Assembly (NCBI RefSeq): GCF_000142905.1
Contig: NW_013657672.1
Location: 451,826-515,825, forward strand
DNA: 64,000 nt
From: Thecamonas trahens ATCC 50062
Lineage: Eukaryota; Protista; Apusomonadida
Reading direction: 5' to 3'
The position numbers and the translations under genes are program-made. Below, in pieces: positions 5,835-25,592 of this stretch. Within the stretch, counting starts at the first letter, position 1, and each line of letters opens with the position of its first letter. The notes beneath the pieces were generated by a model. The model was not told where the DNA came from. It worked only from the letters and a program-made list of their open reading frames with translations, and made no database searches.

Positions 5835-8800
5835 TCACCCGCGCTGCTTGAGCGTGATCTTGTCGCCGAGCGAGAGAGCAATGCCCTGCGTCTCGGAGCG
5901 GATGCGGATAAAGCCGCCGATCTTGCCGTCGGCCTGGCGCTCGATGGAGACCTGGCCAAGCGCGTCTTCGCCAAAGATGGAGCGAGCGTAGAGGTTGGCG
6001 GCGAGAAAGTCGCAGTCGCCGGCGAGGGCCGACTCGGGCGTGAGGCAGCGCATGTTGGTCGACTCGGTAACGTGCTTGAGGAAGCGCGGGATCGAGGTAA
6101 ACGACGACGAGATGGCAACGCGGTTCTCCCACGCGTACTGGGCCCACATGGAGCGGAACTCGGAGAGCGAGACCGTGGCCGGCATGACATACGAGAGGAT
6201 GTCGAGCGAGATCGACTCGAGCACGACGCAGTGCTTGTCGTTAGCCGACGAGCCGGCAACGTCGTAGGTGCAGACGCCAAAGATGATGCCGGTCTCGGTC
6301 GACGAGACCTTGAGGTTGGCCCTCACCGTGCGGAAGTTGTGCGGGCCGATGGTGAGCGCCGTCGGCCGCTCCACCACCTTGAGGTCGCCAAGCGTCGAGA
6401 GCTCGAGTGTCAGGTTCTGCAGCGTGTCGGCCGTCTGGTTGACAATGAGCACCTCCATGGCAATGTCGTACTGGTGGACCGAGAGGTAAGCCTCGGCATA
6501 GACCGCGTCCGAGAACCCGGTGAGCTGGAAGACCTGGTCGAGCTGCAGCTTCGAGTCCGAGGCTGACTCGGACTTGCCGGTCGCCCGGTAGATGTCGACC
6601 GAGAGGTCGTCCTCAAAGATGACGTCGCCGGCGCCCTTGGGCCGGAGCTGCGGGATCTGGATGACGTCGTCGACGTGGACGTCAATGACCTTGCGCTCGG
6701 TCGTCGCCTCGGCAGCTGCGCTGCTCGCCTTGGTCTCCAGCAGCGCCGCAAACGTCTTGCCCGACAGCTCGAGGAAGAGCTTGCGGAGAACAGGCGAGGG
6801 GTTGGCAATGACCCGAAGGCAGAACGCGACCCGCGCATACGCATCCGGGTCGATCGACCGACCGCCGGGCAGCCCCGCGCCGGTCCGCCCCGACGCGCCC
6901 AGCCGGAGAATCGAGTTGAGAATGAGCATGATCTCCGCCGCAATGGCGTTGGCCCGCTTCGCGTCCTTGATGATGTCCAGTGCCTTGAAGACGAGCTTGG
7001 TGAGCGTGGTGGCCAGGACGGCACCCAGGAAAAGTCGCCCTTGAACAGCAGGTCGCGTAGCGGGTAAAGCGACGACGTCGCCGCCGTCGCCTCCACGTCA
7101 CCGTGCCGCGACTCCGAGTACGCCGACTGGGTCGCGTACGTGCCGTCAGCGTTGAGCCGCGGCGCGCTCGACGCCTTGGGCGGCGGTGCAGATGCCGAGC
7201 CCTCGGTGGCAGCCGCGCCCTCATCGTCCGCCTCGTCCTCGTCGTCGGTCAGGAACGGAATGTCGCCGAGCGTCGACCGGATCGACTTGAACGCCTCGGA
7301 CACGTCCTCGCCAGTCTCGGCGTACTCGCCGATGATCCACAACGCGCCGCGCATGACCTCGGACGAGTGAATCGAGCCAAACATCGCCATGAGCTTGTGA
7401 AGGACCGGCTTGCGGAGGTGCGGGTTCGTGTGGACCACCTCGCGGACAAAGACCACCACGTCTGACGCCGACGCCGACGCGTCCGACACAAAGTCCATCA
7501 GCAGGTCGACAACGTCGGCCGCCACATCCGGAAAGTTGACCGCAATTGAATGGATCGACTGGATGAGGATCCGCCGGTACTGCTCGGCCTTGGCCTCGTC
7601 CGACTCGGCCTGCGTCCGCGCCACCTCCTTCTTGAGCACCGCAATGACCTGCGAAATGTTGCGCGGCGCCACGAGGTCCATGCAAATGTCCAGCGTCTTC
7701 TTGCGGATGTCCAGGTTCGGCGAAGCCAGCGCCCGGAGAATGTCCATCAGCACATCCTGCAGCACACGCGTGTACTTGGCCTTGAGCGTCGCCAGCCGGT
7801 CGAGCACAATGAGCTTCACGTTGTTGTCGGCTTGGTTGACAATGAGGTCCACAAACGTCGTCGCCGCCGCACGCACCGCCGTCGCTGCCGAAGACAGGAG
7901 AATAAGCGTGATCGCCGCCTCGAACCGCACAGACGGCGACGTCGAGTCGAGGAGCGTGCCCACAACACGGATGTACCGCGACCGCTCCGACGGCGACGAC
8001 CGGTACACCTTGCGGATGAGCTCAATGACCCCAAGCTGCATAGAGTCGTTGAACGAGCTCACAGTCTCCAGGTGCTCCGCCAGATACTTGATCGCCCGCG
8101 CCTCGTCGCACGAGTACAGCGCCACAAACGCGTTCCGCTGCACACCCTCGTCGTTGTTGGCGGCAAGAACCTCCTCCAGCAGCTCGGCCGCGTCGGGCAC
8201 CAGATCCGCCGACGTCATGTAAATCGACATCAGCGCCATCACCGCGTTGCGCTTGACGTACGTGTGCCGGTGGGTGAGGCACGTCTTCACCGACGGCACA
8301 AGCGTCTCCAGCAGGTCCGCCTCCTTGATCCGGCACAGGAAGCGGAGCGTCGAGCCTCTCACGTACTCGTTGGGGTGGTTGAGGTCCTGCATCCACGCGT
8401 TACTATCCCCACCACGCACACAAGCTCTCCTATGAGTCCTACACCCCACCAGCCATTCTCCATCCCACTCCCTTCACCCCACCCCTCTCACGGGTCCCCC
8501 TCTCTCCTCCCGCCCCGGAACCCCCTGGCTTGCGGCCGAACCGCCGTTCGGTGGCCGAAAGCAGCAAAAAATGGAGCCACGTCGCCAGAGAGCGACAAGG
8601 CAGGGGGGGGGGCTTAGGGCGGAGTAGGCAAGGAGGCGGAGAGGGGGGGGAGGGGGAAGAGTATGTGCTTGCAAGTTGTACGTACCAGACCAGGATAAAC
8701 TCACGCTTGAGCGAACCGTCGGGCTCGTTCTTGGGAACCATCTCAAAGTAGTACAGAAGCAGCTTCTTGAGGGCCTTGTCGCGGGTGGGGAGGACGAAGC

Positions 8801-8981
8801 GAATGACCGTCATGAGCAGGTCCATCTTCTCGCCACCGGCAAGCATGCTCTCAATGAGCTCCTTCATTCCCTCGAGCTTGACAAGGTCGTCAGAGTTCTC
8901 AAGCTTCTTTCGGATCTCATTCTGTGTCGCAGGCGCTCCCCGTGCCGTGGACAGCAGCAGTGTGCATGGCACTTCAGTCAT
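5835..8981 (-). CDS. COPB1: Coatomer subunit beta (beta-COP); one intron, one apparent frameshift
   Basis: MTEVPCTLL...LLMTVIRFVLP...EFILVC|NAWMQDLNHPNEYVRGSTLRFLC; QLTGFSDAVYAEAY; IRIRSETQGIALSLGDKI. Intron 8403-8685 (GTACGT...GATAG). Adding one T at the run 7030-7033 restores GDFFLGAVLATTLTKL. Confidence 0.95.
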
Positions 8982-9206
8982 GGCCACTGCCTTGCAAGTC
9001 GAGTCTTGTCCCCGCTGGCTGGTTGACTGGCTGGCTGGCTTGGCCGCCGCCCGCCAGCCGCCGGCCAACCAGCCGCTGGATGCACAAACTGACAAACTCG
9101 TCGCATTGAAAGCAAAATACTTTCACCACTGCCTGGCCACCGCCCGCAGGAGCCTATGCCTACGGCAAGTTTCATTTTGTCACAGAAGGAGCATCTCATT
9201 GCTTTC

Positions 9207-12200
9207 TCATGACAGCGTCGGCAACGCAATGCCGCCGGGCGCAGCATCGGCCGACGACGCAGACGCCACATCGTCGTCAAGTGACATCGAGTCGAACAGC
9301 CGCGACGAATACGTCCGGATCCGGCTCGCCACCTCGTCGGGTGCGTCGTCGGCAGCAAGCGCACTAAGGAGCTCGGTGAGGTGGCTCTCACCGTTGAGCT
9401 CCTGTGTCCGCGCGAGATACGCCACCGAAAACGCCTCCTCCTGCGCAAGGATGAGCTTGGCCACCGAGGCGTACGCCGTCTCTACAAACTCGGGCGGCAC
9501 GTCAAGGCCATCTGCAAGCGCCTCATCGGCGCCCGACGATGCCGGGCCTGACGTGAGCGAGTCCAGGAACTGCGACATGGCGTCGTGGTTTGAGACCACA
9601 AACTCGTTCATCTTGGCCATGAACGGCTCTTTGCTCCCAAACTCCTTGCCGTTGGACAAGTTCTGGATGACCTTGGCCAGCAGAATAAGCACCCGCTGCG
9701 CCGACTTGTTCGGTGGGCCCTCGAGAAGGCCGTAGGCGTGCGGCGCCGTGAGCGCAGGAACCAGGAAGCGGAGGAAGAAAAATCCGCCGACCGTCACAGA
9801 TCGCAGGTCACTCTGCAGTCGCGCAAGAACGCGCCCGGCCTGCGGCGAGCCTGGATTCTGAACCGCAACCTGATCCTCCACAAACCGCGTTACAAGCTCG
9901 TAGTCGGATGCAATCGTGTCCAGGTTCTCCGACCATGCCGCAAGCAGCTGGTTGCGCTCAGCCTCGCTCACTCTCGTTGCGCCCAGTGCGTTCAGCAGCC
10001 GCGCAGCTTCGTCTTGCGACGTCGCCAGCGAAGCCGCTGCCGCACCGATTGTCTCATGGACTGACGACGCCAGCGACGCAAGCGAAATCGGAAACTTGGC
10101 GCTCGTGGCGCTCATCACCACAGCAAACAGCTCGCGGAACGATGGCGGCACGTTCTCCATCGACATCTGGATCCGCACCCATGCCGACTGGCAGAGCGTG
10201 AGGAGCTTGAACCGGTTGACGTCCACGTTCGAGTCGAGCAAGTCGACCTCGCCGTCGTCGGGTCCCGCCACCGACACACGCTTGGCATCAACCTCCACGC
10301 GCCCGTACTTGGACACTGCCTCCGCCACCACCATACCCAGCGTCGCCGACAGGTAGTCGATCCCGTGGATCTTCGAGAACACTTTGAACGCCTTGGTTGC
10401 CAGCGAGTTGGTTCGGAACAGCGTGTTGAGGGAGAGCGCGCAAGCCACCTCGGCTTGGACCTGCGCCGTGAGGAACGCCAGGCTCTGCCCGGCCGCCTCA
10501 TAGATGTGGACCAGCGATCGCGCGGCTAGATCCGCGTCTGCAGTCCCCACCACATCTGCCAGCGCCAGCGCCAACGCAAAGTCCGGTGGCCACGAGACCA
10601 TCGCCTTTTCCAGCGCGTCTCGCTTGACCCGGCTCAGCGGCGGCGCGCTCCGCGATCCCAACGTCCCGTACACTACCGCCCGACGCAGCTTGGCCGTCAG
10701 CTTGAGCGGCTGCACGCCTGCCTCGGCCTTGGATCGCATGTAGAGCCAGAGCCCGGTGAGAACGCCGGCAACCACTACAACAACAACCAGCACCACGGCA
10801 GCCACAATACCTCCCGTGTTTGACGAGCTCGGTGATGGAGTCACAACGCCCGCCACCGGGCACGCCGCCAGCGGCGTCTCACTTTCGCCGCACCCAGCCG
10901 ACGCCGTTGTGCACACCCCGCTGCTCGCGCACCAGCCACACTCGGCAAGGAGCGAGACTGTGCACTCGGCGCAAGTTCTCGGCATCCCACAATCATAGTA
11001 CGTGAACGACGACCCACTCGCATAGTTGCGCCCGCCCTTCGCCACCGTCATCGGCCCGCCGCCGGCCTCGCGCCCTGCAGGCATCGTACACTCGAGCGCA
11101 CTCGACGAGAGCCGCACACACACACCAGTTGCATCTGCAAGCGGATGGCTGATTGCGTAGTCGGTCCCGGCCACAAACGTGCCACCAGCCAGCACCACCC
11201 GCGTCCCACCCGCGAGCGAGCCCGATGTCGGCGAGCCCGCCCCGCCGGTCAGCGCCGGGCAGCTGGCGTCCGACGACGCAAACACGGGCAGACCGCCCGA
11301 GCACGCGCCTGCGGTGGTGCACTCGGACGACGAGAGGCACCATCCGCAGTCGGCCCCACCGGCAGTGCATGCCGAGCAAACGCTGCCTACGCATGCGTAG
11401 TACATCACAGAGAGCGTCGAGTCGGCCACCGTCGCCAGTCCGTCTGTTCCCGCCGCCGCCACCGCCGCCTGCCGCGACGCCGCTCCCTGCGACGCCGCCG
11501 GAATCGCGCACCGCACAACATGGCTCCCGTCGGTCGTCGCCGGTACCACAATCGGCGTGCCTGCCGCAGTAAACACGCACTCGAGCACTCCGGAGCTTGC
11601 CGCCCCGCCGCTCACCGCGCCTGCTCGCAGTGGGTCCAGCGTCAGCGTCAGCATCGTCCCGCCCGGCGCGCCTACCGACAGCGGACTCACCGACGCCATG
11701 CGCGGGCACTGACCGGCGGTAGTCACAAACGGCGAGTAACTCGCACACCCGGACGCCGGCAGACATCTTCCAGCAGAAACACAGAACCCACACGGCGATG
11801 CGTTCGGCACGTTTGGCACATACGCAAGGCACTCCGAGCATGATGAGCCTGCCGGTGCACACTCGTACGCCTCGAACTTCTTCTCCGGCGCAGAGAGCCG
11901 CTTGGCAGAGCCCGAGCGCCGCACACCCACGGTGAGCGCCATCGGCAGCTCCGCCGGCGGAAAAGTGCACACCAGCGACGGTGGCGAGCCTGAAAGAAAG
12001 GTCGTAGGCACCTCCATGCCGGCTTCGGCATCGTCTGCAGACGTGTTGTAGAGGCAGGCCATGCCGGCGTCAAAGCCGGTTCCAGTCAGCGTGACCAGGA
12101 GCTCGGCGCTCGAAATCTCTTGTGCACTCGGTGCAATCGAGGTAACGGCCGGGCAGTTGTGAAAGGTATCGCCGACGGCGCAACCGCCCTCGGTCCCCAC

Positions 12201-14255
12201 GTCGCGGCACGTCGAGTCGCTCTCGCACCAAAAGCACGAGTTTGAGCCAAACGCGCAGTCGGCACACGACGACGACGACTCGCCGCAGGTCACGTACCGG
12301 TAGCTCGCAAGCGGGTCGCTGCTTCCGATGAATGGCGTAAAAGCTCCGTCAATCGGCAGTGGCGGCAGCGTGCCGAGCACAAGCTCGAGGCTCACGTCGC
12401 CGCTGCTGCCGCCCACGGCGCTCGGCGCAACGCAGCTGACCGAGCTGCTCGTTGGGTTCCAGCTCGCACCCACAGCCACCGTCTTGTTGAACACACACGT
12501 GTAGCTCGTTCCCGCGATGCTTGGGTCAACAAAGCCCTGTCCGGTCAGTATCACCGAGTTGCCACCATCCGGCGGGCCCTTGGACGGCGCCACACGGCTA
12601 AGCGCGGGGCATGTCTCCGACACCACAAACGATGCTGCCTCGCATAGGCTTGCGATCGTCGACGATGGCGAGCAAAACCCACCGTAAGAAGGGCACCATG
12701 AGCAGACTCCTCCACCGGTCGCCACACACGCATGGCACGACGAGTTGCTCGATCCGCACGACACATACTCGAGCGAGTAGCTCTCGGGCGCATAGCTCGC
12801 GCCCAGGTGTTCCAGCGACATGTTGGCCGTCCCGGCCGGACCCGTCGGAATTAAAGCCCGAAGCTCGGTCTCGGAGACAAAGGTCGTGCTCGCCGTGCCG
12901 TAGCCCGTATCAAACCGAGCCGAGACCGCAGGCAAAACGTCGACAAAGCCTACACCAGTGATTGTGAGCTCGCCGCTGGCCGCGGTGTCGGCGACAACCG
13001 CGGTTGGGGCAATCGCCGTCACCGCCGGGCACACCGTCGGCGGCACACATACGCTGTCACGCTTCTCGGTGCAGGTCATCGTTGTCGCGCACCACGCGCA
13101 GTAGCCGTCAACCGCGCAGCTTGCGCACGAGGTATAAGAGCCGCAGTCATGGTGCTGGATTCTGGAGAGTACCGCAGGGTCACTGGCGGTCACCACAAAC
13201 ACCTCGTTGGTGTTGGGAACGAGAGCGTAGTCGCGCGTGCTGGACACCTTGTTCGACGTGAGCTCGAGCGTGTCGTACACACTCAGGTCTTCCGGATCAA
13301 ACCGAACAAGTGCGTTCGGTGACGAGGTGACAACAAAGAGAGCGTCGCCGTCGGCATCGTACCACATCGCACGGATGGTGCCCTTCGCGATGCCGAGGCC
13401 GACCACGGTTGGCGGGATGGACGTCTCGTCGAGGGCAAGAATAAAGTCCTGGTCGGTCGCGGCGAACATCTTCCGGCGGACCTCTGAGTATGCCAGCGCC
13501 ACGTAGTCGCAGCAACCGACCGTGTGGAAGGCGCCGTTGCGGGGGTTTGCTCGCTCAAGGATGGCGATGCGCGCCTGCTTCCACCCAATCCACACATGGG
13601 TGTCGGTGGCAGTGGCCACAAGTGTCTTCTCCTCGCATCCGCTCGGACTAAGCTGCGGAAGATCAAAGGCCTCGTTCCGGATGCCATCGTGGATGAGAAG
13701 TGGTGCAGAGGTACTGGCCTCACATAGGTACGTCACATCGTAGTCGGCGTCATGGAACATGACGTGGAGGCTTGTACCGTACGACTGGACGACAGTGCCT
13801 TCGGCCGGCGATGCAGTCCACGTACCCGAGGCCGGCGGAAAGGGGATGGTCACCGTGCTCCTGGGGCTTGCCCGCACGCCGACGATGAGATCGCCGTCGC
13901 TCCGCCGCGCCACGCCGACCGAAGACGAGTCCCAGGCGCGAAAGGCGACGACGCCGCTCGCTGACAGCCCGCCGTCCGCCTCGGCCTGCTCGTCAAAGGG
14001 CCACGTCGCCCGCGGCACCGACCACAGCACCTTGTTGCCGCAAAAGAAGAAACGATCCGTCGGCTGATCGTACATCATCGCCCGCACCACTCGATAGTCT
14101 CCGTGACTCTGCTCCTTGTTGGCCAGCTCAGCCATGCCAGAAAAGGCCGCAGCAGAGACAGCCAGCCAGCCTCCAACGATGGCCACACTCGCCAGGGCGA
14201 CCACGAGCCCATGCGCGGCACTTTCCCTGTCCGGTGTACCATACCGAGTACGCAA
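9207..14255 (-). CDS. Plexin-like single-pass receptor: signal peptide, beta-propeller, 6 PSI + 5 IPT/TIG, TM, cytoplasmic RasGAP
   Basis: Six CxxxxSCxxC...CxWC...CP PSI motifs alternate with IPT motifs (e.g. PSKGPPDGGNSVILTGQGF). TM IVAAVVLVVVVVVAGVLTGLWLY at about 10745-10810. RasGAP motifs TLFRTNS and GGFFFLRFLVPAL...AKVIQNL...KEPFM. The track start is TTG; the true ATG is probably 14212 or 14242 with a missing G. Confidence 0.88.
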   Translation of the reverse strand: MRTRYGTPDRESAAHGLVVALASVAIVGGWLAVSAAAFSGMAELANKEQSHGDYRVVRAMMYDQPTDRFFFCGNKVLWSVPRATWPFDEQAEADGGLSASGVVAFRAWDSSSVGVARRSDGDLIVGVRASPRSTVTIPFPPASGTWTASPAEGTVVQSYGTSLHVMFHDADYDVTYLCEASTSAPLLIHDGIRNEAFDLPQLSPSGCEEKTLVATATDTHVWIGWKQARIAILERANPRNGAFHTVGCCDYVALAYSEVRRKMFAATDQDFILALDETSIPPTVVGLGIAKGTIRAMWYDADGDALFVVTSSPNALVRFDPEDLSVYDTLELTSNKVSSTRDYALVPNTNEVFVVTASDPAVLSRIQHHDCGSYTSCASCAVDGYCAWCATTMTCTEKRDSVCVPPTVCPAVTAIAPTAVVADTAASGELTITGVGFVDVLPAVSARFDTGYGTASTTFVSETELRALIPTGPAGTANMSLEHLGASYAPESYSLEYVSCGSSNSSCHACVATGGGVCSWCPSYGGFCSPSSTIASLCEAASFVVSETCPALSRVAPSKGPPDGGNSVILTGQGFVDPSIAGTSYTCVFNKTVAVGASWNPTSSSVSCVAPSAVGGSSGDVSLELVLGTLPPLPIDGAFTPFIGSSDPLASYRYVTCGESSSSCADCAFGSNSCFWCESDSTCRDVGTEGGCAVGDTFHNCPAVTSIAPSAQEISSAELLVTLTGTGFDAGMACLYNTSADDAEAGMEVPTTFLSGSPPSLVCTFPPAELPMALTVGVRRSGSAKRLSAPEKKFEAYECAPAGSSCSECLAYVPNVPNASPCGFCVSAGRCLPASGCASYSPFVTTAGQCPRMASVSPLSVGAPGGTMLTLTLDPLRAGAVSGGAASSGVLECVFTAAGTPIVVPATTDGSHVVRCAIPAASQGAASRQAAVAAAGTDGLATVADSTLSVMYYACVGSVCSACTAGGADCGWCLSSSECTTAGACSGGLPVFASSDASCPALTGGAGSPTSGSLAGGTRVVLAGGTFVAGTDYAISHPLADATGVCVRLSSSALECTMPAGREAGGGPMTVAKGGRNYASGSSFTYYDCGMPRTCAECTVSLLAECGWCASSGVCTTASAGCGESETPLAACPVAGVVTPSPSSSNTGGIVAAVVLVVVVVVAGVLTGLWLYMRSKAEAGVQPLKLTAKLRRAVVYGTLGSRSAPPLSRVKRDALEKAMVSWPPDFALALALADVVGTADADLAARSLVHIYEAAGQSLAFLTAQVQAEVACALSLNTLFRTNSLATKAFKVFSKIHGIDYLSATLGMVVAEAVSKYGRVEVDAKRVSVAGPDDGEVDLLDSNVDVNRFKLLTLCQSAWVRIQMSMENVPPSFRELFAVVMSATSAKFPISLASLASSVHETIGAAAASLATSQDEAARLLNALGATRVSEAERNQLLAAWSENLDTIASDYELVTRFVEDQVAVQNPGSPQAGRVLARLQSDLRSVTVGGFFFLRFLVPALTAPHAYGLLEGPPNKSAQRVLILLAKVIQNLSNGKEFGSKEPFMAKMNEFVVSNHDAMSQFLDSLTSGPASSGADEALADGLDVPPEFVETAYASVAKLILAQEEAFSVAYLARTQELNGESHLTELLSALAADDAPDEVASRIRTYSSRLFDSMSLDDDVASASSADAAPGGIALPTLS

Positions 14256-14594
14256 GCACTAGAAAGATAGGTATGGAGATGTGGGCCAGAGAGAGTTCCT
14301 TTGCCATAGTGGCTGGTGATGTTCCTCGCGAACGAGCGTGGCGCACCTGGCAAGGCTTGCAAAGGTTGCAAAGGACTTCGGTATAAAAGAGCAAACTATG
14401 TTCTCAAAAAGCATTGTATCCTCTGCCGGGATTTTGCCCACCACCAGCGATTGTGGAACCTGTCGTCGGCAAAGGCGCCCTCTGCTTCGCCAGAACAGCC
14501 CGGGACGCAAGCCGGAGAGCCAAGACTCGGTCAAAGCCGCACCACTGCCGCCACCTCCTCCTCCACCGAGTACACCTCTCGCCTACAAGCTGGG

Positions 14595-16715
14595 ATGGGC
14601 CGCGCCGAATGTCCGGTCTGCTTTGGCACCTATCCCTCCGCCCTCATCCACGCCCACGTTCTGGTCTGCCTCCGCGCTCCCCCGCCTACGCTCCCGACCA
14701 TGGCCTGTCCGCTCTGTGCCCGTCGCTTTGCCCGCTCAATCATCGAGAGACACGCCGCCACATGCAATGGTCCGCCGCTGGCGCGGGCCTCGCCGCGGCT
14801 TGCGCCACCGCGTCGCGTCCCTACTCCTGCTCCGCGCTCCGCGCAGATCCCGCCGCTCGCGCAAGTACCGGTCACACTCCCGCCGCCGCCATCGTCGCCG
14901 ACGGCTAGATCGCTGCGCTCGCCTGTACGATCACCGGCCCACCCGCGCGTCATGCACTTTCCGCCGCCGTCGCCTTCGCTCGCTGCCTGTGCCGGCCGAG
15001 TTGCCTCGATCCTCACCGCCTTTCCCCGCCGCCCGCCGCACCCACATCCGTCACCGCGCGGCCAGCTCTCGCCACGCCCGCACATGCACTCGCGCCCGCT
15101 CGCATCTACGCTCCCGCTCCCGCTCCTGAATCCATCACCAAGCCACCGGTTGATGCCGCGGCAACCGGCATCGATCCGCACACCGCGAAATGCGATCGTG
15201 ACCGCACGGATGGCGTTCCCCAGTCCCGCCCCGGCTCCGGCTCTGTACGACGCTCCCAAGCTCGCCAAAGCGTTCTACTCTGCGACCACGTTTGCGAATA
15301 CCCTCTCGACCTTTGCCGCTATTGCTCACTCGGTCGGGCTCGACGATCTGCCGGTGGCGGAGCGGTACCCGGTCCTCCGCGACGCGTGCTTTGGACATAT
15401 GCGGCTGCGGCAGATATTCCGCCAGCACCTTGACCCGCTCCGTGCACGCGAGGGCTACGCGTCCGCCCCGTGCACCGGGATGCGGGTCCTGGTTCTCGGT
15501 GCCGGTCCGGGTGGCCTGCGGACCGCCATCGAAGCGGCGGTCCTCGGTGCTGAGGTGCTGGTCGCCGAGAAGCGGCACAGGTTCTCGCGGCACAACGTGC
15601 TGCACCTGTGGAAGTTTATGGTCGCCGACTGTCAGGCGCTCGGAGTCAAGGCGCTCGCGCCACGGTTCTGCCGCGGCGGCCTCAACCACGTCTCGATCAA
15701 AGCGCTTCAGCTTGCGCTCACCAAAATTGCGCTCCTCGCCGGCGCCGTCGTGGTGCCGGGCCAGTCCGTGGCGGGCGTCTCGGCCTTTGACAACGATAGG
15801 GAGCGGTGGCATGTCGAGCCCGAGGCGGGCACCGAGCTGGCGCCGCGGGTTGCGGACTTTGACTTTGATGTGGTGGTCGGCGGGTGCGGATCGGCGGCTC
15901 CGCGGCTCCGCGGCTTTACATCGTCGACGTTTCGGGCGAACGTGGCCATTGGCATCACCGCCAACTTTGTCCGCCGCGGCTCCGCCGCCGAGTCCAAACT
16001 CCATGAGATCCCAGGCATTGGCCGGCAGTACCATCCGCAGGTCTTCAACGCCATCGAGGCCGAGACCGGTGTCGCACTCGAGAACCTGGTTTACTATCAG
16101 GACGAAACACACTACTTTGTCATGACCGTCTCCCGCGACTCGCTTGTGGCCCGCGGCGCGGTCATTGCTGACCTCCCCAGCATCGACGCGCTCCTCGCCC
16201 GCGACAACATCGACTGCGACGCACTGCACGCCCTGTGCATGGACGTTGCGCTAGCAGCAACCCGGCTGCTCGCCGGCGCTGAGCTGCCCGAGCCCGAGTT
16301 TGCGCTCACAGCACGCGGAGCGCCCGACGTCGCTGTCTTTGACTTTACCGAGATCTCGTACCTTGACGCTTCGGCGCGGGTAGAACTCGCTCGCCGCGGC
16401 TCCAGCGAGCGCTCGCTGATCCTTGCTCACGTCGGAGACGCATTGCTTGAGCCGTTTTGGCCGCAGGGTACCGGCGCGTCGCGGGCTTTTCTCTCCGCGC
16501 TCGACCTCGCGCACATGCTTGTCCGACTTGCTGGTGGCACTCCGGTGCCCGAGGCGCTTGAGGAGCGTGAGCGCGTCTATGCGCTCCTCTCGTCGACGAC
16601 TGACGGCAACATTCGCAAGACCTTTGCCTCACACACTCACGAGCCGGCCAGTCGGTACGACTTTGTGCCGCCACCGTCGGGACGCGACGTGTCTGATCTC
16701 ATTACCAGCGTGTAA
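14595..16715 (+). CDS. MICAL: MICAL-type FAD monooxygenase with two N-terminal UBZ/C2HC-like zinc fingers
   Basis: VLVLGAGPGGLRTAIE...EKRHRFSRHNVLHLW...FCRGGLNHVSIKALQ; AIGITANF; LENLVYYQDETHYFVMT; DVAVFDFT; VGDALLEPFWPQGTG are MICAL monooxygenase signatures. N-terminal CPVC..HVLVC and CPLC..HAATC. ATG at 14595; the frame is open from 14316. Confidence 0.9.
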   Translation: MGRAECPVCFGTYPSALIHAHVLVCLRAPPPTLPTMACPLCARRFARSIIERHAATCNGPPLARASPRLAPPRRVPTPAPRSAQIPPLAQVPVTLPPPPSSPTARSLRSPVRSPAHPRVMHFPPPSPSLAACAGRVASILTAFPRRPPHPHPSPRGQLSPRPHMHSRPLASTLPLPLLNPSPSHRLMPRQPASIRTPRNAIVTARMAFPSPAPAPALYDAPKLAKAFYSATTFANTLSTFAAIAHSVGLDDLPVAERYPVLRDACFGHMRLRQIFRQHLDPLRAREGYASAPCTGMRVLVLGAGPGGLRTAIEAAVLGAEVLVAEKRHRFSRHNVLHLWKFMVADCQALGVKALAPRFCRGGLNHVSIKALQLALTKIALLAGAVVVPGQSVAGVSAFDNDRERWHVEPEAGTELAPRVADFDFDVVVGGCGSAAPRLRGFTSSTFRANVAIGITANFVRRGSAAESKLHEIPGIGRQYHPQVFNAIEAETGVALENLVYYQDETHYFVMTVSRDSLVARGAVIADLPSIDALLARDNIDCDALHALCMDVALAATRLLAGAELPEPEFALTARGAPDVAVFDFTEISYLDASARVELARRGSSERSLILAHVGDALLEPFWPQGTGASRAFLSALDLAHMLVRLAGGTPVPEALEERERVYALLSSTTDGNIRKTFASHTHEPASRYDFVPPPSGRDVSDLITSV

Positions 16716-16727
16716 TTCGCCCTTCTT

Positions 16728-19643
16728 TTACCGTCCGCTGACCGAAGTACCGGCAACAAAGAGGCCAAGACCGGCTGATGGCGCCGCATCCGGCACGAGC
16801 GCGTGTTTTCCGGGCGGAGCGCCAGCGCTCGAGCCTGGCCCACGGGCTGGCCGCAGCCGCGACGATGCGAGCTGTGGCGGCCTGCGGCGCGAGGTCTTGA
16901 GGTATGAATTCTCGTTAAAACGGGCAACACGGGCCGGCGGTGCCTTGGCCGGCAGGGAAGGCGCCGGCTCGTTCTCCTTGGTCGCCGCAAGCAACGCAGC
17001 GAGCGAAGCAGTGCGGGCGGCGGTGGAAGCGGCGGCCGCTTCGGCCGCAGCGGCGGCTGCAGCTTGCATGGCGAGGTCAGAGCGGGGCCCCCGCTCCGGT
17101 GAGCCAGCCAGCGAGTTGGGCTTGAGCTCCATATCCGACGGGTGCGGCAGGTGCGGTGGGGACGCTGCGGCCCGCGCATCGGCTTCGGCGGCCTCCTTGA
17201 TGCGGGCGTGGAGCTCAGTCCGGGCCTCCGGCAGAAGGTTCCACGACAGCGGCATCGAGAGCGAGGTGGTAATCGAGGCTTCAAAGAGGGTGCGAACCCG
17301 CGAGACATGGACAATGGCATCACGGCGGCGCTTCTCCTTGACTCGCTTGCGCTCGAGCTCGGCCGCAATGGGAACGCCAGGTATTTTGGCAAGGATGTCG
17401 AAGAGCTCCTGGTCGTACACCATCGGCCTGCCCTCGCAATCGATTTCAGGCGGCGGGAGGCCGTCGGTCTCGCCGCTGTCGGACTCTTCCTTCGGCACCG
17501 GGGGCGGGCGGGAGCGGCGGACCGACATCGAGCCCTTGCTCAGCTTGGCAGCGAGCATCTCCTGCGCAGCCTTGGCCCGGCCAGAGAATCGGGCCTTGAT
17601 AGCGGCAGCCTTGAGTCGCTCGGCCTCGGCAGCCTCACGCTGGGCAAGCGCGTGCTCGCGGCGCTTAGCCGACGCCGACGTCTCCGAGTACAGCGTCGAG
17701 GTGTTGACAAAGTATGGAGCGTAGACGGCCATGGCGTCGTCGTCGGGCGTCGGATAAATGCGCTTGTAGCCACTGAGGACCGAGTCCTCGTACGCGGTCT
17801 GGGCCTCCCAGAACTCGGGACTCTGTCTTGCTGACGACGAGGCTTCACCGTCGGCACCCGCCGTAGCGGCCACAGGCCGCGAGCCTGGCGACGGCGTCGC
17901 TTCGGCAGCCGCCGCTGCCCCAGCGAGCTCGTCGGTTGGCGCGGTCGAGCCGGCGCGGTTTGGGGCCGTCAGCCGGTCCTGCACCGCGGCGCGGTGCGCC
18001 TTGTGAAAGCGCGACTTGGCCTTGGGGTCGAGGTTGAGGAGGGCGAGGGCCTCGGCGATGACGCCGCTCTTAACGTTGCGGTCGATTTCGGCGTCAGTGC
18101 CAAACGACGGCGAGTGGTTGACCTCGAGAATCCACGGCTTGAGGGCGGCGTCGATCATGATGTCAAAGCCAAGAATCTCAAAGCATTGGAAGGGGGTGGC
18201 GGTCGGTGCCGATGAGGTGAACACAGTGGCGTAGGTGTGGGCGAGCGTCGGCTGGGCAGTGATGAGGGTCTTGATGATGGCGTCCTCGATGGAAGCCCAG
18301 AGGGCCGGGACGTCGATACCGGCAGCAGCCCACTCGGCGTTCTGTACCTTGATGGAGCGCTTGGCGCCGTCGGAGCCATCGCCGGCGGAGAAATTGGTGT
18401 TCTTCTTGTTGACCGAGTAGTTGGTGAGGTGCTGAAAGGCCGAGCCGAGCGACTTGGACGTCGGCTGCGAGTACTTTTCGGTGCAGAGGCGGACAAGGCC
18501 GTCGTCGTAGATGAAGATACGTAGCGGGTCGGCCGAAGTGACGAGGACGTAGATGCGAAGGTCGAACTTGTAACCGTCGATGAGCAGCGGGTTGTTGACA
18601 TACACCTGCGCCACGTAGTGGTCAAAGGCGCCGATCTCGTCGCCAGTGTGGGTGAGGAAAATGCCCTTGCCCTGCGCCGAGTTCTCGGGCTTGCAGATGA
18701 GTGGCTTTGCAGAGCGCTTGCGAAAGTGGGCCTTAAAGTCGCCGTAGTCGGCTGGGAGGATCCAGGTCTTGGGGAAAAAGGTGAACGCGTCCGGAAACTT
18801 GCGCTGCATGCGGGTGAGGTTGCGGGCGAGTGAGTCCTTGCGACAGATCTCGTGCATGCCCGGGAAGTGATTAATCCGCTGGAACGGCTTCATGGTGGAA
18901 AGGATTTGCAGCGGCGCCGTAGAGTCGATCCAGTACACGTCCCACTCTCGGGCCGCGTTGGACTCTTGCACGTGCCATCCGAGCTCGGCCACGCACGCCC
19001 GGACCACCTCGTACTTGCACTGCTGCACACAGACGTTGACGGCCTTGGCCGACTTGCTCAGCCGGGTCCTCGTCCCGCGGTTGTTGGCGGCGACGGCATC
19101 GGCCCGGGACTTGAGCCGCCTGCTCTTGGACGAGCTCTGCAACCGTTTGGCCGACGTGTCCATCTTGGTCATCATGCCCGAGACCTCGGTCAGCAGCTTC
19201 TTTCCCTTGCCACTCCGTCGGCTCCCCGTCGTCGTCACCGCCGTCGACGCTGGCCCACCCCCGCGCCCACGCCCGCTCCCGCTCCCGCTGCCTCTGCCAC
19301 CTGTCCGACTCGACTTTGCCAAATTTTGAATGGCCGCCCGACGCGCGCCAGGCCGAGCCGAAGAGGCGGCATGGCGGACCGCGGCTGGGCTGGTGTGGCC
19401 AATGTCGGAGTCGTCAGACTCGTACTCGTACGAGTATGCGTATACCGAGACTAGGGTGGAGCCCTCATCAGACTCGGTGTACTCTTCGTACTCGGACGAG
19501 GTGTCTGTGCATGTGCTTGCGCTTGCGCTCGATTCGTCCGCCATGCTGGCGAACACTGGGCGTGGAGAGGTGGGCGAAAGTGAGTGTGGTTGGCTGCCAA
19601 TTGGCTCTCGCTGGAGGGGTGGGAGGGGGGAGGGGGGGCGCAT
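16728..19643 (-). CDS. TTLL6: Tubulin polyglutamylase, TTLL6/13-like
   Basis: WDVYWID, QRINHFPGMHEICRKDSLARNL, FFPKTWILP, KPENSAQGKGI, KFDLRIYVLVTS, HLTNYSVNK, CFEILGFDIM, LEVNHSPSF. Alternative ATG at 19544. Confidence 0.9.
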   Translation of the reverse strand: MRPPSPLPPLQREPIGSQPHSLSPTSPRPVFASMADESSASASTCTDTSSEYEEYTESDEGSTLVSVYAYSYEYESDDSDIGHTSPAAVRHAASSARPGARRAAIQNLAKSSRTGGRGSGSGSGRGRGGGPASTAVTTTGSRRSGKGKKLLTEVSGMMTKMDTSAKRLQSSSKSRRLKSRADAVAANNRGTRTRLSKSAKAVNVCVQQCKYEVVRACVAELGWHVQESNAAREWDVYWIDSTAPLQILSTMKPFQRINHFPGMHEICRKDSLARNLTRMQRKFPDAFTFFPKTWILPADYGDFKAHFRKRSAKPLICKPENSAQGKGIFLTHTGDEIGAFDHYVAQVYVNNPLLIDGYKFDLRIYVLVTSADPLRIFIYDDGLVRLCTEKYSQPTSKSLGSAFQHLTNYSVNKKNTNFSAGDGSDGAKRSIKVQNAEWAAAGIDVPALWASIEDAIIKTLITAQPTLAHTYATVFTSSAPTATPFQCFEILGFDIMIDAALKPWILEVNHSPSFGTDAEIDRNVKSGVIAEALALLNLDPKAKSRFHKAHRAAVQDRLTAPNRAGSTAPTDELAGAAAAAEATPSPGSRPVAATAGADGEASSSARQSPEFWEAQTAYEDSVLSGYKRIYPTPDDDAMAVYAPYFVNTSTLYSETSASAKRREHALAQREAAEAERLKAAAIKARFSGRAKAAQEMLAAKLSKGSMSVRRSRPPPVPKEESDSGETDGLPPPEIDCEGRPMVYDQELFDILAKIPGVPIAAELERKRVKEKRRRDAIVHVSRVRTLFEASITTSLSMPLSWNLLPEARTELHARIKEAAEADARAAASPPHLPHPSDMELKPNSLAGSPERGPRSDLAMQAAAAAAAEAAAASTAARTASLAALLAATKENEPAPSLPAKAPPARVARFNENSYLKTSRRRPPQLASSRLRPARGPGSSAGAPPGKHALVPDAAPSAGLGLFVAGTSVSGR

Positions 19644-20800: not shown

Positions 20801-23800
20801 TTACGTCTCAATGATGCCCACGGCACTCCGCCGTCGCCCGCTGTCGGAATCGACCGAGCCCATCGAGACCGAGGCCACTGGTGACGCACCCGAGACCGAG
20901 GCGCGGAACTGGCTGCCCGAGCTCTTGCGCGAGAGGCCGCTGGAGCGGCCGGAGCTGTTGCCTGTGGTTCGCCCAGGCGTGGTGCCCGGCGACCGACCGG
21001 GTGACGGAATTGGAGCGAGCGTCGAGCCCGATGAAGCAGCCATGAGCGCCTGCTGCGCAAGCTCGACCGACGCCAGAGACGATCGCCGGCGGCGGACCAG
21101 CGGCTCTGCCGACGTCCTACTCGACGATCGCCTGGCGCCCGTTGTTGACCCCGTCCGCTGCCGGTGGGTGCTTGGCGTTCCAGCCCTCGATCGCGCCGTT
21201 GACTTGGGCGTGCCTGAAATCGACGACTTGCGCCGCGGCGTGTTCTCGACAGACGCCAGCGAGCGCCGCCGCTTGGTCTCCGTCGGATCCTCAAGGACTG
21301 CACCGAGCAGAGTGGTGCCGTCCAGGTTGTTGCTGGCGTGCATGACCGGGTGATCCGTCGGCACAAGCGTGCCTTCGCCCGAGACCGACAATCGGCGAGG
21401 CGTGTACGAGATCGAGCCGCGCTGCCCGGTTGTCCGTGGCGTGCGGTGGGTGTAGGACGAGCCACCGACGCCTCGCGGAGTCACCTGCGGCGACAGCCTG
21501 TGCGGCGTTGTAACCCTTGGCGATCTCGAATGCAAGTCACCGGTGAGCGACCCGTCCTGAGAGTGGGCCAACATGTTGGCCAAGCCATCCGGGCCCTGCG
21601 TCATCGCCAACAGGATATTTTGTTGCAAGGCAGACGTAAACAGCGCTTGCGTGTCCGTGGTGGGTGGTGCCGACGTCTCCCACATGCCAGCGCCGTTGTT
21701 AGGCGCCATTACTGCCGGCGCCATCCGTCCATGCGCGTCCTTGCGGAAGACTCGCATGTCACTCGCCGCCGAGCTGCCCGCAAATTTGGAGAACGACTCG
21801 ATGACACTGACAAGCCGTCCGTTGCGCGACCGCATCTTGGCCAACGCTTTCTTGTGCTCGCGCGCCTGGCCCTTCAGCTGCCGCTTGAGGCTTTTGATTT
21901 CGTGCCGCTGCCGCCCGATGACCAGGTTGAGCGACTCGATAGCAGCGGCGGCGGCCTGCGCCATGAGGTCCTTTTGCTGGGTGGATCGTGAGCGGACCCG
22001 TTGCCGCGTCGCCACCCGCGAGCCTGCCCGCGACGGCACTTGCTCGCTGCCAGACTGCGCATCATTGTCCAGTGCACCGGCGGACCGATTGCATACAGAC
22101 TCACGCCGGAGCTCACGATCCGACACCCGCTGCTCCTCGCCAAAGTCAACCGCCGAGACCGAGCACCGGCGAGAGGGCATGGTGCGCAAAGGCACACCGC
22201 GCTGTGGTGGTGGTGAGACGCTTGGTGGCGACGACGACCGCGAAGGTGCGCGTGAGCCCACCCGCGAGCCCACCCGCGAGCTCGCACGAGACACGCTCCG
22301 CGATCGCCCGCCGCGCGAGCCGACAGCCGATCCGTCATCGGACGCAGCAGGCTCCGCCACACGTGGCACTTCGGCGACAACAAGCTTGGCCGGGTCGATC
22401 GAGCTGAGAAACTTGGACGAGCCGTGGCGCAGCTTGTGCTCCAGGGCCGTGCCGCGGATTGAATCCTTTCGGCCGCGTGACAGCGGCGTGTTGCCGCTGC
22501 TGGCCACGCCGACGCCTGAGCCGGCCGACGTTTGGCCTGGCGAGCTCGAGGCGAGCACCAAATGGCCGGACTCGTTGGTGACCGGCGTCGGCGAGGCTTC
22601 GGACGAGGTTAGCTTGCTCGCCCTGTGTGGGCGCGACTCGAGCGGTCGCCGCAACCGGCGCCCGCTGGTTGTTTCGTTCTGGAGCTTGCTGGCGAGCGCC
22701 GCTGCCGAAATGGCTGCGCGAATATCAAACGACGACGACGTTGAGGTGACCGACGAGTCCGAGTCGGAGCCTGACGCCTCACCGTCGCCCGAGCCTGACG
22801 ACATGACCGAGTGCGAATGCGAGCGGCGGTAGGCGTCGAAAATCGAGCCTGTCGACCCGCCAGCCGACGACATGCCCTGATGGTGGGAGCCGGGTGCGAG
22901 CGTGTGTGCGCTGGTACCAGCAGTCTCGACGGCGCCGGCAGCCGCGCCGGCAGGGGAAAAAACCTGCGAGGCGCCCGAGTTCATGGCGTTGAGCTCGCGC
23001 ATGCGCTCCTCGGCCGTTTTCATGATGTCGAGGTCAAAGATGGTGAGGCCGTGGAGGGCAAGCACGTCGACAAAGTCGCGCTTGGAGAGCACGTCGAGCT
23101 CGCAAAAGGTGGCGGCCCGGACCGACGCCGAGCGGCGCGCATCCTCAGACATGAGCGCAATCTCGCCAAAGTACTGGCCCTCGTACAGCGTGACGTACAC
23201 AATGTCCTGCTCCTTGTTGCACACCTCGACGCGGCCCTTGGAGAGAATGTACATCTCCTCGCCAATGTCGCCTTCGGTGATGATGTAATCGCCCTCGTCG
23301 GCAAACTGCGGCTTGAGCCGCAGAATGATGTCGGTGACAAACTCGGGCGAGGTGCCCTTGAACACCGGGTTGTTCTTGAGGATCTCTTGCGAGAGAAAGG
23401 TGGCAACCTGTGCCCGCAGCGCGCTCGACAACTCATCCATCAGCTGTTTTCCGTCGGACGCCGCCTTTTGGCGCGTCCATGAGAACACAAAGTGCTCGCG
23501 GATAGCAATGCGGATGTCATTGGGGAAGCCCCAGTACGCGAGGTACTTGTTGACCTCATCCATTCGCTCTTGCGCCGCGTCGCGCGAGATGCGGATGACC
23601 AGGTACGTGATCGAGCCGATGACGTACGAAAAGACGCAGAGCGAGAGTGTGAGCACAACTAGGGCGTAGGCTCGCTCCAGCAGATTCTGCGGCACAATGT
23701 CGCCGTAGCCGACGGTGGAGACTGTGAGCGTCGCCCAGTAGAACGAGGTGATGTACTTGGCCGCCACTGGGCCCTCGTCGATGCCGATCTCCTCCACCCA

Positions 23801-25366: not shown

Positions 25367-25449
25367 AGTTTGAAGGGGGCCACGCGCACGGACAGTTCGT
25401 GTCGCCGTTGCCTTCTGTGTGTGTGCTTGTCGAGCGGGAGGCAAGCAAG

Positions 25450-25592
25450 TGTGGGTTGGGTGGGTGGTGGGTTGGGGTGGGTGGTGGCGTGGGTGGTGGA
25501 GGTGGGTGGTGGGTGGTGGGTGGTGGGTGATGGGTGGGTGATGGGTGGGTGGGTGGTGGGTGGTGGTGGGTGGTGGGTGGTGGGTGGTGGTA
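25450..25592. repeat. G-rich low-complexity (GGT/GGGT)n tract
   Basis: Directly visible upstream of the channel ATG. Confidence 0.85.

What the first reader, a model, noticed from the sequence alone, without database searches (positions are those of the whole stretch)
9207..14255. Proto-plexin architecture: short propeller, strictly alternating 6 PSI / 5 IPT, canonical RasGAP
Seen: a beta-rich N-terminal region of about 330 aa ending LSRIQHHDCGSYTSCASC..YCAWC, which resembles the Sema-to-PSI junction; then PSI-IPT alternation, a TM helix and a GAP domain with FRxNS and FLRF motifs. Established: animal plexins have a Sema domain of about 500 aa, 3 PSI, 6 IPT and a split GAP with an inserted Rho-binding domain. 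Inference: this is either an ancestral stage of plexin assembly or an independent convergent fusion of the same modules.
Basis: partly seen in the sequence, partly recalled or inferred. Interest (0 to 1): 0.82.

Follow-up and report, generated by a model that had tools for sequence, protein, structure and literature searches.

The report
Plexin-like receptor with ordinary RasGAP
A marine protist close to the animal-fungal lineage (Thecamonas trahens) carries a real cell-surface receptor laid out like an animal plexin, but its inner enzyme is an ordinary Ras switch-off domain and its outer head is not a recognisable Sema domain, so it is a look-alike from a larger undescribed receptor family, not a proven plexin ancestor.

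Summary
Window 9207-14255 (-) is one uninterrupted 1682-codon ORF. It encodes a beta-rich head of about 330 aa, six PSI motifs alternating with five IPT/TIG domains, one TM helix and a RasGAP domain with an intact arginine finger (FRTNS) and FLRF.

The genome is Thecamonas trahens ATCC 50062.

The GAP is canonical. It matches NF1, p120GAP and SynGAP by sequence, profile and predicted structure. Plexins share only the general fold, at 8-12% identity. It carries a 74-aa helical hairpin, not a Rho-binding domain.

The head has no Sema signal. Its resemblance to plexin comes from PSI1 and the junction. Two blades resemble bacterial DUF6923/DUF4394 propellers. Its fold could not be modelled.

The gene belongs to a family of at least 12 Thecamonas loci (three are near-identical copies). 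All share a TM-spacer-RasGAP cassette under varied ectodomains: PSI/TIG, FN3, cadherin-like, disintegrin, LamG. These GAPs lie apart from those without a TM helix. An amoebozoan transcript (Soliformovum) has a similar head-(PSI-IPT)x6-TM-RasGAP layout.

The genome's only MICAL gene lies head-to-head with the receptor.

The scan had already noted paralogues elsewhere in this genome. Verdict: plexin-like by architecture, not a plexin; shared ancestry remains open.

The parts
9207..14255 (-). Whole open frame of the receptor (1682 codons plus stop). The database gene model (P0001, 1642 aa) starts at M41, which is nt 14135.
14145..14210 (-). In-frame hydrophobic stretch that looks like a signal peptide (aa 16-37). 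It lies upstream of the first ATG, so the true start is unresolved.
13149..14135 (-). Beta-rich head (aa 41-369) with about seven blade-like repeats seen by eye. It has no Pfam family. Blades 5-6 resemble bacterial DUF6923/DUF4394 propeller repeats. It ends in the SRIQHH-DC junction to PSI1.
13020..13148 (-). PSI1 (aa 370-412)
12759..13019 (-). IPT/TIG 1 (aa 413-499)
   Evidence: 27 bits
12600..12758 (-). PSI2 (aa 500-552). Supported by the cysteine motif only, with no HMM hit.
12288..12599 (-). IPT/TIG 2 (aa 553-656)
   Evidence: 34 bits
12147..12287 (-). PSI3 (aa 657-703). The HMM hit is weak; the motif is present.
11859..12146 (-). IPT/TIG 3 (aa 704-799), 18.8 bits, just under the cut-off
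11700..11858 (-). PSI4 (aa 800-852). The HMM hit is weak; the motif is present.
11394..11699 (-). IPT4 (aa 853-954). It has no HMM hit but aligns to an IPT of the Soliformovum homologue.
11256..11393 (-). PSI5 (aa 955-1000)
10992..11255 (-). IPT/TIG 5 (aa 1001-1088)
   Evidence: 26.8 bits
10857..10991 (-). PSI6 (aa 1089-1133)
   Evidence: 23.9 bits
10740..10814 (-). Transmembrane helix (aa 1148-1172). It ends 108 aa before the arginine finger, which is the family's constant spacing.
9393..10631 (-). RasGAP domain (aa 1209-1621). The AF2 model has pLDDT 89.
10404..10418 (-). Arginine-finger motif FRTNS (R1281), invariant in 23 aligned Thecamonas GAPs
9861..10082 (-). Helical hairpin of 74 aa (aa 1392-1465). 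It forms most of a roughly 95-aa insert that lies between the segment ending in ...KFP and the FLR helix. The insert is shared only with the Thecamonas PSI/TIG receptor paralogues and two environmental proteins.
9765..9776 (-). FLRF motif (R1496), invariant
14316..16715 (+). Divergently oriented neighbour: a MICAL-type flavin monooxygenase and the only such gene in the genome

Best explanation
This is a genuine single-exon gene of Thecamonas trahens. It encodes a type I receptor-type RasGAP. The ectodomain has a beta-rich, probably propeller-like ligand-binding head on a rigid stalk of alternating PSI and IPT domains. A single TM helix follows, then a catalytically competent canonical RasGAP inside the cell. 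It is one member, and in the tree the earliest-branching one, of the PSI/TIG subgroup of a larger Thecamonas family. In that family one TM + ~110-aa spacer + RasGAP cassette is joined to many different ectodomains. The inferred mode of action is as follows. An extracellular ligand or cell/substrate contact changes the oligomeric state or orientation of the receptor. This switches its GAP activity on a membrane-bound Ras-family GTPase (Ras or Rap) and locally shuts off Ras-driven actin and adhesion dynamics. The conserved helical hairpin next to the FLR helix is a candidate dimerisation or autoinhibition element. On this reading the gene is a functional analogue of plexin, assembled from the same kinds of modules, but not a plexin orthologue.
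For: Shown:
- The ORF is uninterrupted and carries the domains.
- The genome is identified through paralogues named Thecamonas trahens AMSG_07816 and AMSG_07818 on a contig of the same length as C37.
- The GAP matches SynGAP, NF1 and p120GAP at 1e-23 to 1e-18 as a single sequence. A family profile matches them at 2e-38 to 4e-33, with no plexin at E<=10.
- The finger Arg and FLR Arg are invariant across 23 Thecamonas GAPs.
- In the GAP tree the query plus 5 paralogues plus 2 environmental proteins form a clade at 98/92. All TM-bearing GAPs lie on one side of a 94/94 branch, away from the NF1 and SynGAP/DAB2IP types.
- The TM helix sits 106-115 aa before the finger in 10 of the loci and in none of the 13 scorable GAPs on the other side of the tree.
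- Ectodomains of family members include PSI/TIG, Laminin_G_3, cadherin-like, FN3 and disintegrin.
- The Soliformovum homologue P0007 aligns from the last two blades through to the GAP, BLASTP E 6e-53.
Inferred: ligand-regulated GAP activity, the substrate, and the role of the hairpin.
Against: - No expression, ligand, substrate or activity data exist.
- The annotated start (M41) lacks a signal peptide, and the signal-like stretch upstream has no ATG. The 5' end is therefore unresolved, and with it the formal proof of type I topology.
- The head could not be modelled (pLDDT 33), so 'propeller' rests on repeats, beta content and a 44-bit match of blades 5-6 to a bacterial propeller protein.
- Only the last two blades are significantly similar between the query and P0007 (z 11.9). 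The first 250 aa are not (z about 0).
- Non-orthology to plexin is argued from lack of signal, which very old divergence could also produce.
Confidence: 0.72

Rival explanations
1. Proto-plexin. The whole architecture (head-PSI-IPT repeats-TM-GAP) shares ancestry with plexins. It would represent the state before the head became a Sema domain and before the GAP diverged into the split, Rap-specific plexin GAP.
For: - The module order is the same as in plexins (plexin layout from PMC6374515).
- With PSI1 included, plexins are among only 6 library-wide hits (E 2e-4 to 4e-4) and are the only significant PDB hits.
- hhalign of head+PSI1 against plexin Sema+PSI gives 96% probability, reaching about 100 residues upstream of PSI1, though with low column confidence there.
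- The first IPT of the Soliformovum homologue hits TIG_plexin.
- The layout is shared by Apusomonadida and Amoebozoa, so it may predate opisthokonts.
- The only MICAL gene of the genome is the divergent neighbour. MICAL is a plexin-A partner in animals (my own knowledge, not read here).
- Language-model nearest clusters for the whole protein are plexins, at scores 0.79-0.81, which is a lead only.
Against: - The head alone gives no Sema signal by Pfam, phmmer, hhalign or shuffle test. In the shuffle test the last blades against a plexin Sema domain reach z 2.7 for the query and -0.2 for P0007.
- Blades 5-6 instead match DUF6923/DUF4394-type repeats.
- The GAP is canonical, and there is no RBD.
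- Sister GAPs carry FN3, cadherin-like, disintegrin or LamG heads. Ectodomains were therefore swapped freely on this cassette.
- No Sema or Plexin_cytopl is found in the genome (the controls could not ring).
- Published surveys found no Sema proteins in Capsaspora or Creolimax. Continuity would therefore need losses.
Confidence: 0.17
2. Adhesion molecule rather than a ligand-gated receptor. The ectodomain mediates homophilic or substrate adhesion during gliding or feeding, and the GAP acts constitutively at contact sites.
For: - No paralogue of the head exists in the genome that could serve as a semaphorin-like ligand.
- Family members carry adhesion-type ectodomains such as cadherin-like, FN3 and disintegrin.
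Against: Nothing tested here separates this from ligand gating. The conserved spacer and hairpin suggest regulated rather than constitutive activity, but that is an inference.
Confidence: 0.08
3. Artefact: a mis-assembled, contaminant or dead gene.
For: - The start codon problem.
- A related paralogue group exists as three copies 96-98% identical in DNA. One copy has two in-frame TGA codons and one has an N gap.
Against: - The frame is 1682 codons long and intact, with all catalytic residues conserved.
- GC content matches its surroundings.
- It lies on a 609-kb contig among ordinary eukaryotic genes.
- Paralogues are spread over many contigs.
Confidence: 0.03

Closest known systems
Plexins (animals and choanoflagellates)
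   Same: Both are type I receptors with an N-terminal head joined directly to a PSI domain. Both have alternating PSI-IPT modules, one TM helix, and a cytoplasmic domain of RasGAP fold with an arginine finger. The junction motif (...SRIQ..DC.s..sC..C) resembles the plexin Sema-PSI junction.
   Different: - The head is about 330 aa, not about 500, and has no detectable Sema signal.
- There are six PSI and five IPT in strict alternation, instead of 3 PSI and 6 IPT with an IPT-only run.
- The GAP is canonical: 25-32% identity to p120, SynGAP and NF1, against 8-12% to plexins, and no PF08337 hit.
- There is no Rho-binding domain. The insert is a helical hairpin placed directly before the FLR helix.
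- The TM-to-finger distance is 108 aa.
Soliformovum irregulare transcript P0007 (EukProt EP01119_P005838; Amoebozoa)
   Same: This is the nearest real relative of the whole layout: a head of about 305 aa, the same SRIQ..DC junction, (PSI-IPT) repeats, a TM helix, and a RasGAP with the FFFLRF..PA..APHAYGLL signature. BLASTP gives E 6e-53 over about 1060 columns.
   Different: - It has six PSI and six IPT.
- Its GAP has no hairpin insert.
- Only the last two blades of the head are significantly similar.
- Its GAP is not resolved as sister to the query in the tree.
Thecamonas paralogues AMSG_07816 and AMSG_07818 (C37) and those on C8:205k, C12, C35 and C46
   Same: They share the TM-spacer-RasGAP cassette with the same hairpin insert (34-40% identity), and each has PSI (where detected; none in the C8:205k copy) and TIG just outside the membrane.
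   Different: They carry other, much larger heads. None has the propeller-like head. An earlier report of this scan calls one of them lectin-headed.
Cytosolic RasGAPs: p120GAP/RASA1, SynGAP/DAB2IP, neurofibromin
   Different: These have no TM helix or ectodomain, and they lie on the other side of a 94/94 branch in the GAP tree.
Met/RON receptor tyrosine kinases
   Same: The ectodomain logic is the same: head-PSI-IPT repeats-TM (from PMC6374515).
   Different: The output domain is a kinase, not a GAP, and the head is a true Sema domain.

Membership tests
Plexin | N-terminal Sema domain (PF01403; seven-bladed, about 500 aa) | tested here: not met
   No Pfam hit in the head at E<=10. No PDB sequence hit without PSI1. 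The head alone scores -1.2 bits against a plexin Sema domain and 0.1% by hhalign. The fold itself is untested because the AF2 model failed.
Plexin | PSI and IPT domains between the head and the membrane | tested here: met
   The numbers differ: 6 PSI and 5 IPT, strictly alternating.
Plexin | Plexin-type cytoplasmic GAP (PF08337) | tested here: not met
   No PF08337 hit. A family profile finds no plexin chain at E<=10. Foldseek ranks plexin-B1 45th at E 0.14. Identity to plexins is 8-12%.
Plexin | Rho-GTPase-binding domain inserted in the GAP (PF20170) | tested here: not met
   The insert is two long helices. It matches only coiled-coil-like hairpins.
RasGAP (PF00616) | Family HMM over the gathering score | tested here: met
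   70.6 bits against a cut-off of 28.3.
RasGAP (PF00616) | Arginine finger (FRxNS), FLR arginine and the K..QN helix | tested here: met
   R1281, R1496 and K1528. R87 and R302 of the model numbering are invariant in 23 sequences.
RasGAP (PF00616) | RasGAP fold | tested here: met
RasGAP (PF00616) | GTPase-activating activity on Ras or Rap | not testable with these tools
   This needs a biochemical assay.
Neurofibromin | GAP inside the NF1 clade, with flanking Sec14-PH | tested here: not met
   The tree separates the query from NF1 rows across a 94/94 branch. There are no CRAL-TRIO or NF1 flank hits.
Receptor-type RasGAP family of Thecamonas (informal, undescribed) | TM helix 106-115 aa upstream of the arginine finger | tested here: met
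   108 aa in the query. The same spacing holds in 10 other loci. No TM-like segment is found in that window in the 13 scorable GAPs on the other side of the tree.
Receptor-type RasGAP family of Thecamonas (informal, undescribed) | GAP domain groups with the other TM-bearing GAPs | tested here: met
   The clade has 98/92 support, and the wider TM-bearing side has 94/94.
Beta-propeller (head) | Repeated four-stranded blades closing a ring | tested here: inconclusive
   - phmmer hit to a bacterial DUF6923/DUF4394/SGL protein at E 3.7e-6 library-wide, and 44 bits without PSI1.
- Nearest language-model clusters are Ldl_recept_b, DUF6923 and DUF4394 at 0.85-0.89.
- The model has almost only beta strands but pLDDT 33.

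The most novel reading that the evidence does not exclude
A head-PSI/IPT-TM-RasGAP receptor already existed in the common ancestor of Amoebozoa, apusomonads and opisthokonts. Plexins would be its descendants, formed by remodelling the head into a Sema domain and the canonical GAP into the split, Rap-specific plexin GAP. The receptor-MICAL partnership would also predate animals, as hinted by the head-to-head pairing with the genome's only MICAL gene.
Probability: 0.15. Interest if true: 0.85.

Novelty: new variant of a known kind. Interest (0 to 1): 0.6.

Why it matters
Published surveys place the origin of plexins and semaphorins in the common ancestor of choanoflagellates and animals. They treat the plexin as a shuffle of a new Sema domain with pre-existing PSI, IPT and RasGAP domains (PMC6374515, PMC8011033).

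This gene shows that most of that shuffle was already in place outside opisthokonts. A head joined to PSI, alternating PSI-IPT, a TM helix and a Ras-family GAP occur together in an apusomonad, and a similar protein occurs in an amoebozoan.

The gene also belongs to a receptor class that seems undescribed: single-pass receptors whose output is a canonical RasGAP, with at least a dozen loci and very varied ectodomains in one protist. No paper found in the library mentions transmembrane or receptor-type RasGAPs in these organisms.

This gives a concrete, testable candidate for how cell-surface cues were wired to Ras and actin control before animals.

Tried and rejected
- AF2 of the head (aa 41-460) with the only available homologue gave pLDDT 33, so no fold search was run on it.
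- The word search with the whole protein and with the Soliformovum head found no further relatives.
- The metagenome scan with the head alignment returned only a PSI match.
- Pfam on the head at E<=10 returned nothing.
- The PDB sequence search with the head alone returned nothing meaningful.
- hhalign of one flatworm plexin cytoplasmic region against the GAP alignments was underpowered (probability below 1%). It did place the plexin FRR finger on the RasGAP finger. Plexins were therefore left out of the GAP tree.
- I looked for an upstream exon or a short intron that would put an ATG in front of the signal-like stretch. No GT-AG pair restores the frame (by hand).
- Neurofibromin-type GAP: rejected by the tree.
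- The hypothesis that the insert equals the plexin RBD site was rejected on fold, since the insert is a helical hairpin. I infer it sits in a different loop: about 8 aa before FLR here, versus about 65 aa after the finger for the plexin RBD. The plexin figure is from my own recollection of plexin-B1 numbering and was not checked here.
- Complex prediction (homodimer of the cytoplasmic domain) was not available.
- The first Atlas call failed.
- The Sema and Plexin_cytopl genome searches were blank, but their controls could not ring, so they carry little weight.
Full report
WHAT IS THERE. Window 9207-14255 on the minus strand is one open frame of 1682 codons. Pfam finds TIG (E 1.4e-22, four stretches), RasGAP PF00616 (2.2e-19, split in two stretches) and PSI (2.6e-07). 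It finds neither Sema nor Plexin_cytopl.

A motif scan finds six PSI cores (C-x2-C...C-x-W/F-C) at aa 377, 507, 664, 806, 961 and 1095. It also finds one strong TM helix at aa 1148-1172, FRTNS at 1280, FLRF at 1494 and K-x-IQN at 1528. Scanned module by module, PSI is over or near the cut-off in modules 1, 5 and 6, weak in 3 and 4, and motif-only in 2. TIG is over the cut-off in modules 1, 2 and 5, scores 18.8 bits in 3, and is not detected in 4. The undetected modules align module for module with PSI and IPT domains of a homologue.

WHOSE GENE. The window is contig C8 (609,142 bp) of a 28.7-Mb, 131-contig, GC-rich, intron-poor genome. Two paralogues found by protein search are named Thecamonas trahens ATCC 50062 AMSG_07816 and AMSG_07818. 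They sit on a contig of 357,088 bp, exactly the length of C37. The organism is therefore the apusomonad Thecamonas trahens, from the sister lineage of opisthokonts.

The database holds this protein as a 1642-aa model starting at M41. That model has no signal peptide. An in-frame hydrophobic stretch typical of one (aa 16-37) lies upstream but has no ATG, and I found no GT-AG intron that would supply one. The 5' end is unresolved.

THE HEAD. Residues 41-369 are beta-rich and show about seven blade-like repeats by eye, of the type ...A-x-(W)YD-x4-5-LF.... No Pfam family hits the head even at E<=10, and no PDB chain matches it by sequence.

HMMER over 1.84 billion representatives with head plus PSI1 gave only six hits:
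- a Soliformovum irregulare (Amoebozoa) transcript, P0007 (3e-10)
- a bacterial protein made of DUF6923/DUF4394/SdiA-regulated/SGL propeller repeats, P0008 (3.7e-6)
- two animal plexins, P0010 and P0011 (2e-4 and 4e-4)
- two PSI-only proteins

I took these apart. Without PSI1 the head still scores 44 bits against the bacterial propeller protein, mainly through blades 5-6. It scores -1.2 bits against the plexin Sema domain. PSI1 alone gives 19-20 bits against plexins.

hhalign of head+PSI1 against plexin Sema+PSI gives 96% probability and runs about 100 residues upstream of PSI1, with low column confidence there. The head alone against Sema alone gives 0.1%. In a shuffle test the last two blades against the plexin Sema C-terminus reach z 2.7 for the query and -0.2 for P0007. 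Language-model neighbours of the head are Ldl_recept_b, DUF6923 and DUF4394 clusters at 0.85-0.89, which are leads only.

AF2 with the two-sequence alignment failed (pLDDT 33, almost only strands), so no fold comparison with Sema was possible. The head has no paralogue in the genome, so there is no semaphorin-like partner with the same head. Conclusion: the head is probably a compact propeller. It is not demonstrably Sema. Only its junction to PSI1 is plexin-like.

THE GAP. As a single sequence the cytoplasmic part matches SynGAP, neurofibromin and p120GAP (1e-23 to 1e-18) and no plexin. A profile of five Thecamonas receptor GAPs matches NF1 at 2e-38, p120GAP at 5e-37, SynGAP at 4e-33 and IQGAP at 1e-12. 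It matches no plexin at E<=10.

The GAP is interrupted just before the FLR helix by an insert of about 95 aa. Most of it forms two long antiparallel helices (model residues 198-271). This insert is conserved in the Thecamonas PSI/TIG receptor paralogues and in two environmental proteins. It is absent from P0007 and from all other RasGAPs. It is not a ubiquitin-like Rho-binding domain.

THE FAMILY. The genome has about 39 RasGAP candidate regions. Six other large ORFs share 30-40% identity with the query over the whole cytoplasmic region. All carry TIG outside the membrane, and all but the C8:205k copy also carry a detectable PSI. Three of these ORFs (C12, C35, C46) are 96-98% identical DNA copies. 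One has two TGA codons and one has an N gap.

In a maximum-likelihood tree of 38 GAP domains, the query, five paralogues and two environmental proteins form a clade at 98/92, with the query sister to the rest. A 94/94 branch separates this clade and its neighbours from the group holding the NF1, SynGAP/DAB2IP and other GAPs.

The unnamed neighbours on the query's side turned out to be receptors as well:
- Laminin_G_3 + RasGAP
- cadherin-like + RasGAP
- FN3 x2 + RasGAP
- disintegrin x4 + RasGAP
- TIG + disintegrin + RasGAP
- a PSI-rich protein

Most of the TM-bearing GAPs, ten loci plus the query, have one TM helix 106-115 aa before the arginine finger. Two loci differ: in the PSI-rich C14 protein (L007) the helix lies 236 aa before the finger, and in L033b no finger motif was found, so its spacing could not be measured. 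None of the 13 GAPs that could be scored on the other side of the tree has a TM-like segment there. P0007 has its TM helix about 103 aa before its finger.

Thecamonas therefore owns a family of single-pass receptors built on one TM-spacer-RasGAP cassette with freely exchanged ectodomains. The window gene is the family's only member with a propeller-like head and is the most plexin-like.

OUTSIDE THECAMONAS. P0007 from Soliformovum irregulare has a head of about 305 aa, the same SRIQ..DC junction, six PSI-IPT modules (its first IPT hits TIG_plexin), a TM helix and a contiguous RasGAP. BLASTP against the query gives E 6e-53 across the protein. Only the last two blades are significantly similar (z 11.9). 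The first 250 aa are not. Its GAP sits unresolved near the Thecamonas receptor clade. No other relative of the head was found.

COMPARISON WITH WHAT IS KNOWN. [quoted passage not shown] Their origin is placed in the choanoflagellate-animal ancestor, with no Sema proteins in Capsaspora or Creolimax. PSI, IPT and RasGAP are thought to have been recruited from older stock (PMC6374515; PMC8011033). Plexin GAP is Rap-specific and is activated by dimerisation through the juxtamembrane helix (PMC3787391).

The present protein meets the PSI/IPT and TM criteria. It fails the Sema, Plexin_cytopl and RBD criteria, so I do not file it as a plexin. Whole-protein language-model neighbours are plexin clusters, but at 0.79-0.81, which is only a lead. 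I found no paper describing this protein or transmembrane RasGAPs in apusomonads or amoebae.

HOW IT PROBABLY WORKS (inferred). The head binds a ligand or surface and the PSI-IPT stalk holds it away from the membrane. Clustering or reorientation is transmitted through the single TM helix and the constant 108-aa spacer to a canonical RasGAP. The RasGAP then switches off Ras or Rap at that spot, changing actin and adhesion during gliding or feeding. The conserved hairpin beside the FLR helix is the best candidate for a dimer contact or an autoinhibitory lid.

THE NEIGHBOUR. The gene is head-to-head with a MICAL-type monooxygenase (Rossman_Mical E 1e-37). That is the only such gene in the genome. 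A tubulin-tyrosine-ligase family gene follows it. In animals MICAL works downstream of plexin-A (my own knowledge, not read here). At the gene density seen in this window, a chance abutment of two particular genes is of the order of 1 in several thousand. It is a lead, not evidence.

VERDICT. This is a real plexin-like architecture outside opisthokonts. Deep common ancestry remains possible (about 15%) and is testable.

The scan had already noted paralogues of this family on other pieces of the genome (s1-746496, s1-756529, s1-753681) and had read this same stretch as s1-756519.

Noticed in passing
window 14316-16715 (+): A MICAL-type flavin monooxygenase (Rossman_Mical E 1e-37) lies head-to-head with the receptor. 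The first ATGs of the two genes are about 460 bp apart. A genome-wide search shows it is the only MICAL-type gene in the 28.7-Mb genome.
   Followed up: partly
G000 loci L030 (C62), L031 (C16), L032 (C15), L033 (C40, two genes), L007 (C14): Further single-pass RasGAP receptors carry unrelated ectodomains: Laminin_G_3, bacterial cadherin-like, FN3 x2, disintegrin x4, TIG+disintegrin, and many PSI. Four of these six have a TM helix 107-115 aa before the arginine finger. In L007 the distance is 236 aa, and in L033b no finger motif was found. All that were placed in the tree (L033b was not) fall on the same side of the GAP tree as the window gene.
   Followed up: partly
L004 (C12:196-204k), L005 (C35:260-270k), L006 (C46:14-22k): There are three copies of one PSI-TIG-TM-RasGAP receptor locus, 96-98% identical in DNA over 5.5-6.8 kb. 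The C46 copy has two in-frame TGA codons in the GAP, and the C35 copy holds a 100-N gap. These may be a recent segmental duplication, haplotigs, or a decaying copy.
   Followed up: partly
window 14145-14307 (-): A signal-peptide-like stretch is in frame with the receptor but lies upstream of its first ATG. An ATG at 14307 opens a different frame that also begins with a hydrophobic stretch. No GT-AG intron reconciles the two. Possible explanations are an assembly indel or a non-AUG start.
   Followed up: partly
window 16728-19643 (-): A tubulin-tyrosine-ligase family gene (TTL E 9e-83) lies directly after the MICAL gene. Actin-modifying and tubulin-modifying enzymes therefore sit side by side next to the receptor.
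   Followed up: no
window 20801-25762 (-): A 1653-aa ORF carries Ion_trans plus a cyclic-nucleotide-binding domain, making it a CNG/HCN-like channel.
   Followed up: no
proteins P0017 and P0019 (ENA metagenome contigs of 9-10 kb): These environmental proteins are about 90% like the C37 paralogues in the GAP region (tree branches about 0.1). A close relative of Thecamonas is therefore present in public metagenomes.
   Followed up: no
window 6410-9095 (-): An Adaptin_N gene starts close downstream of the receptor's stop codon. Its Pfam match begins at profile position 82, so the first exon probably lies in the 8439-9095 ORF.
   Followed up: no
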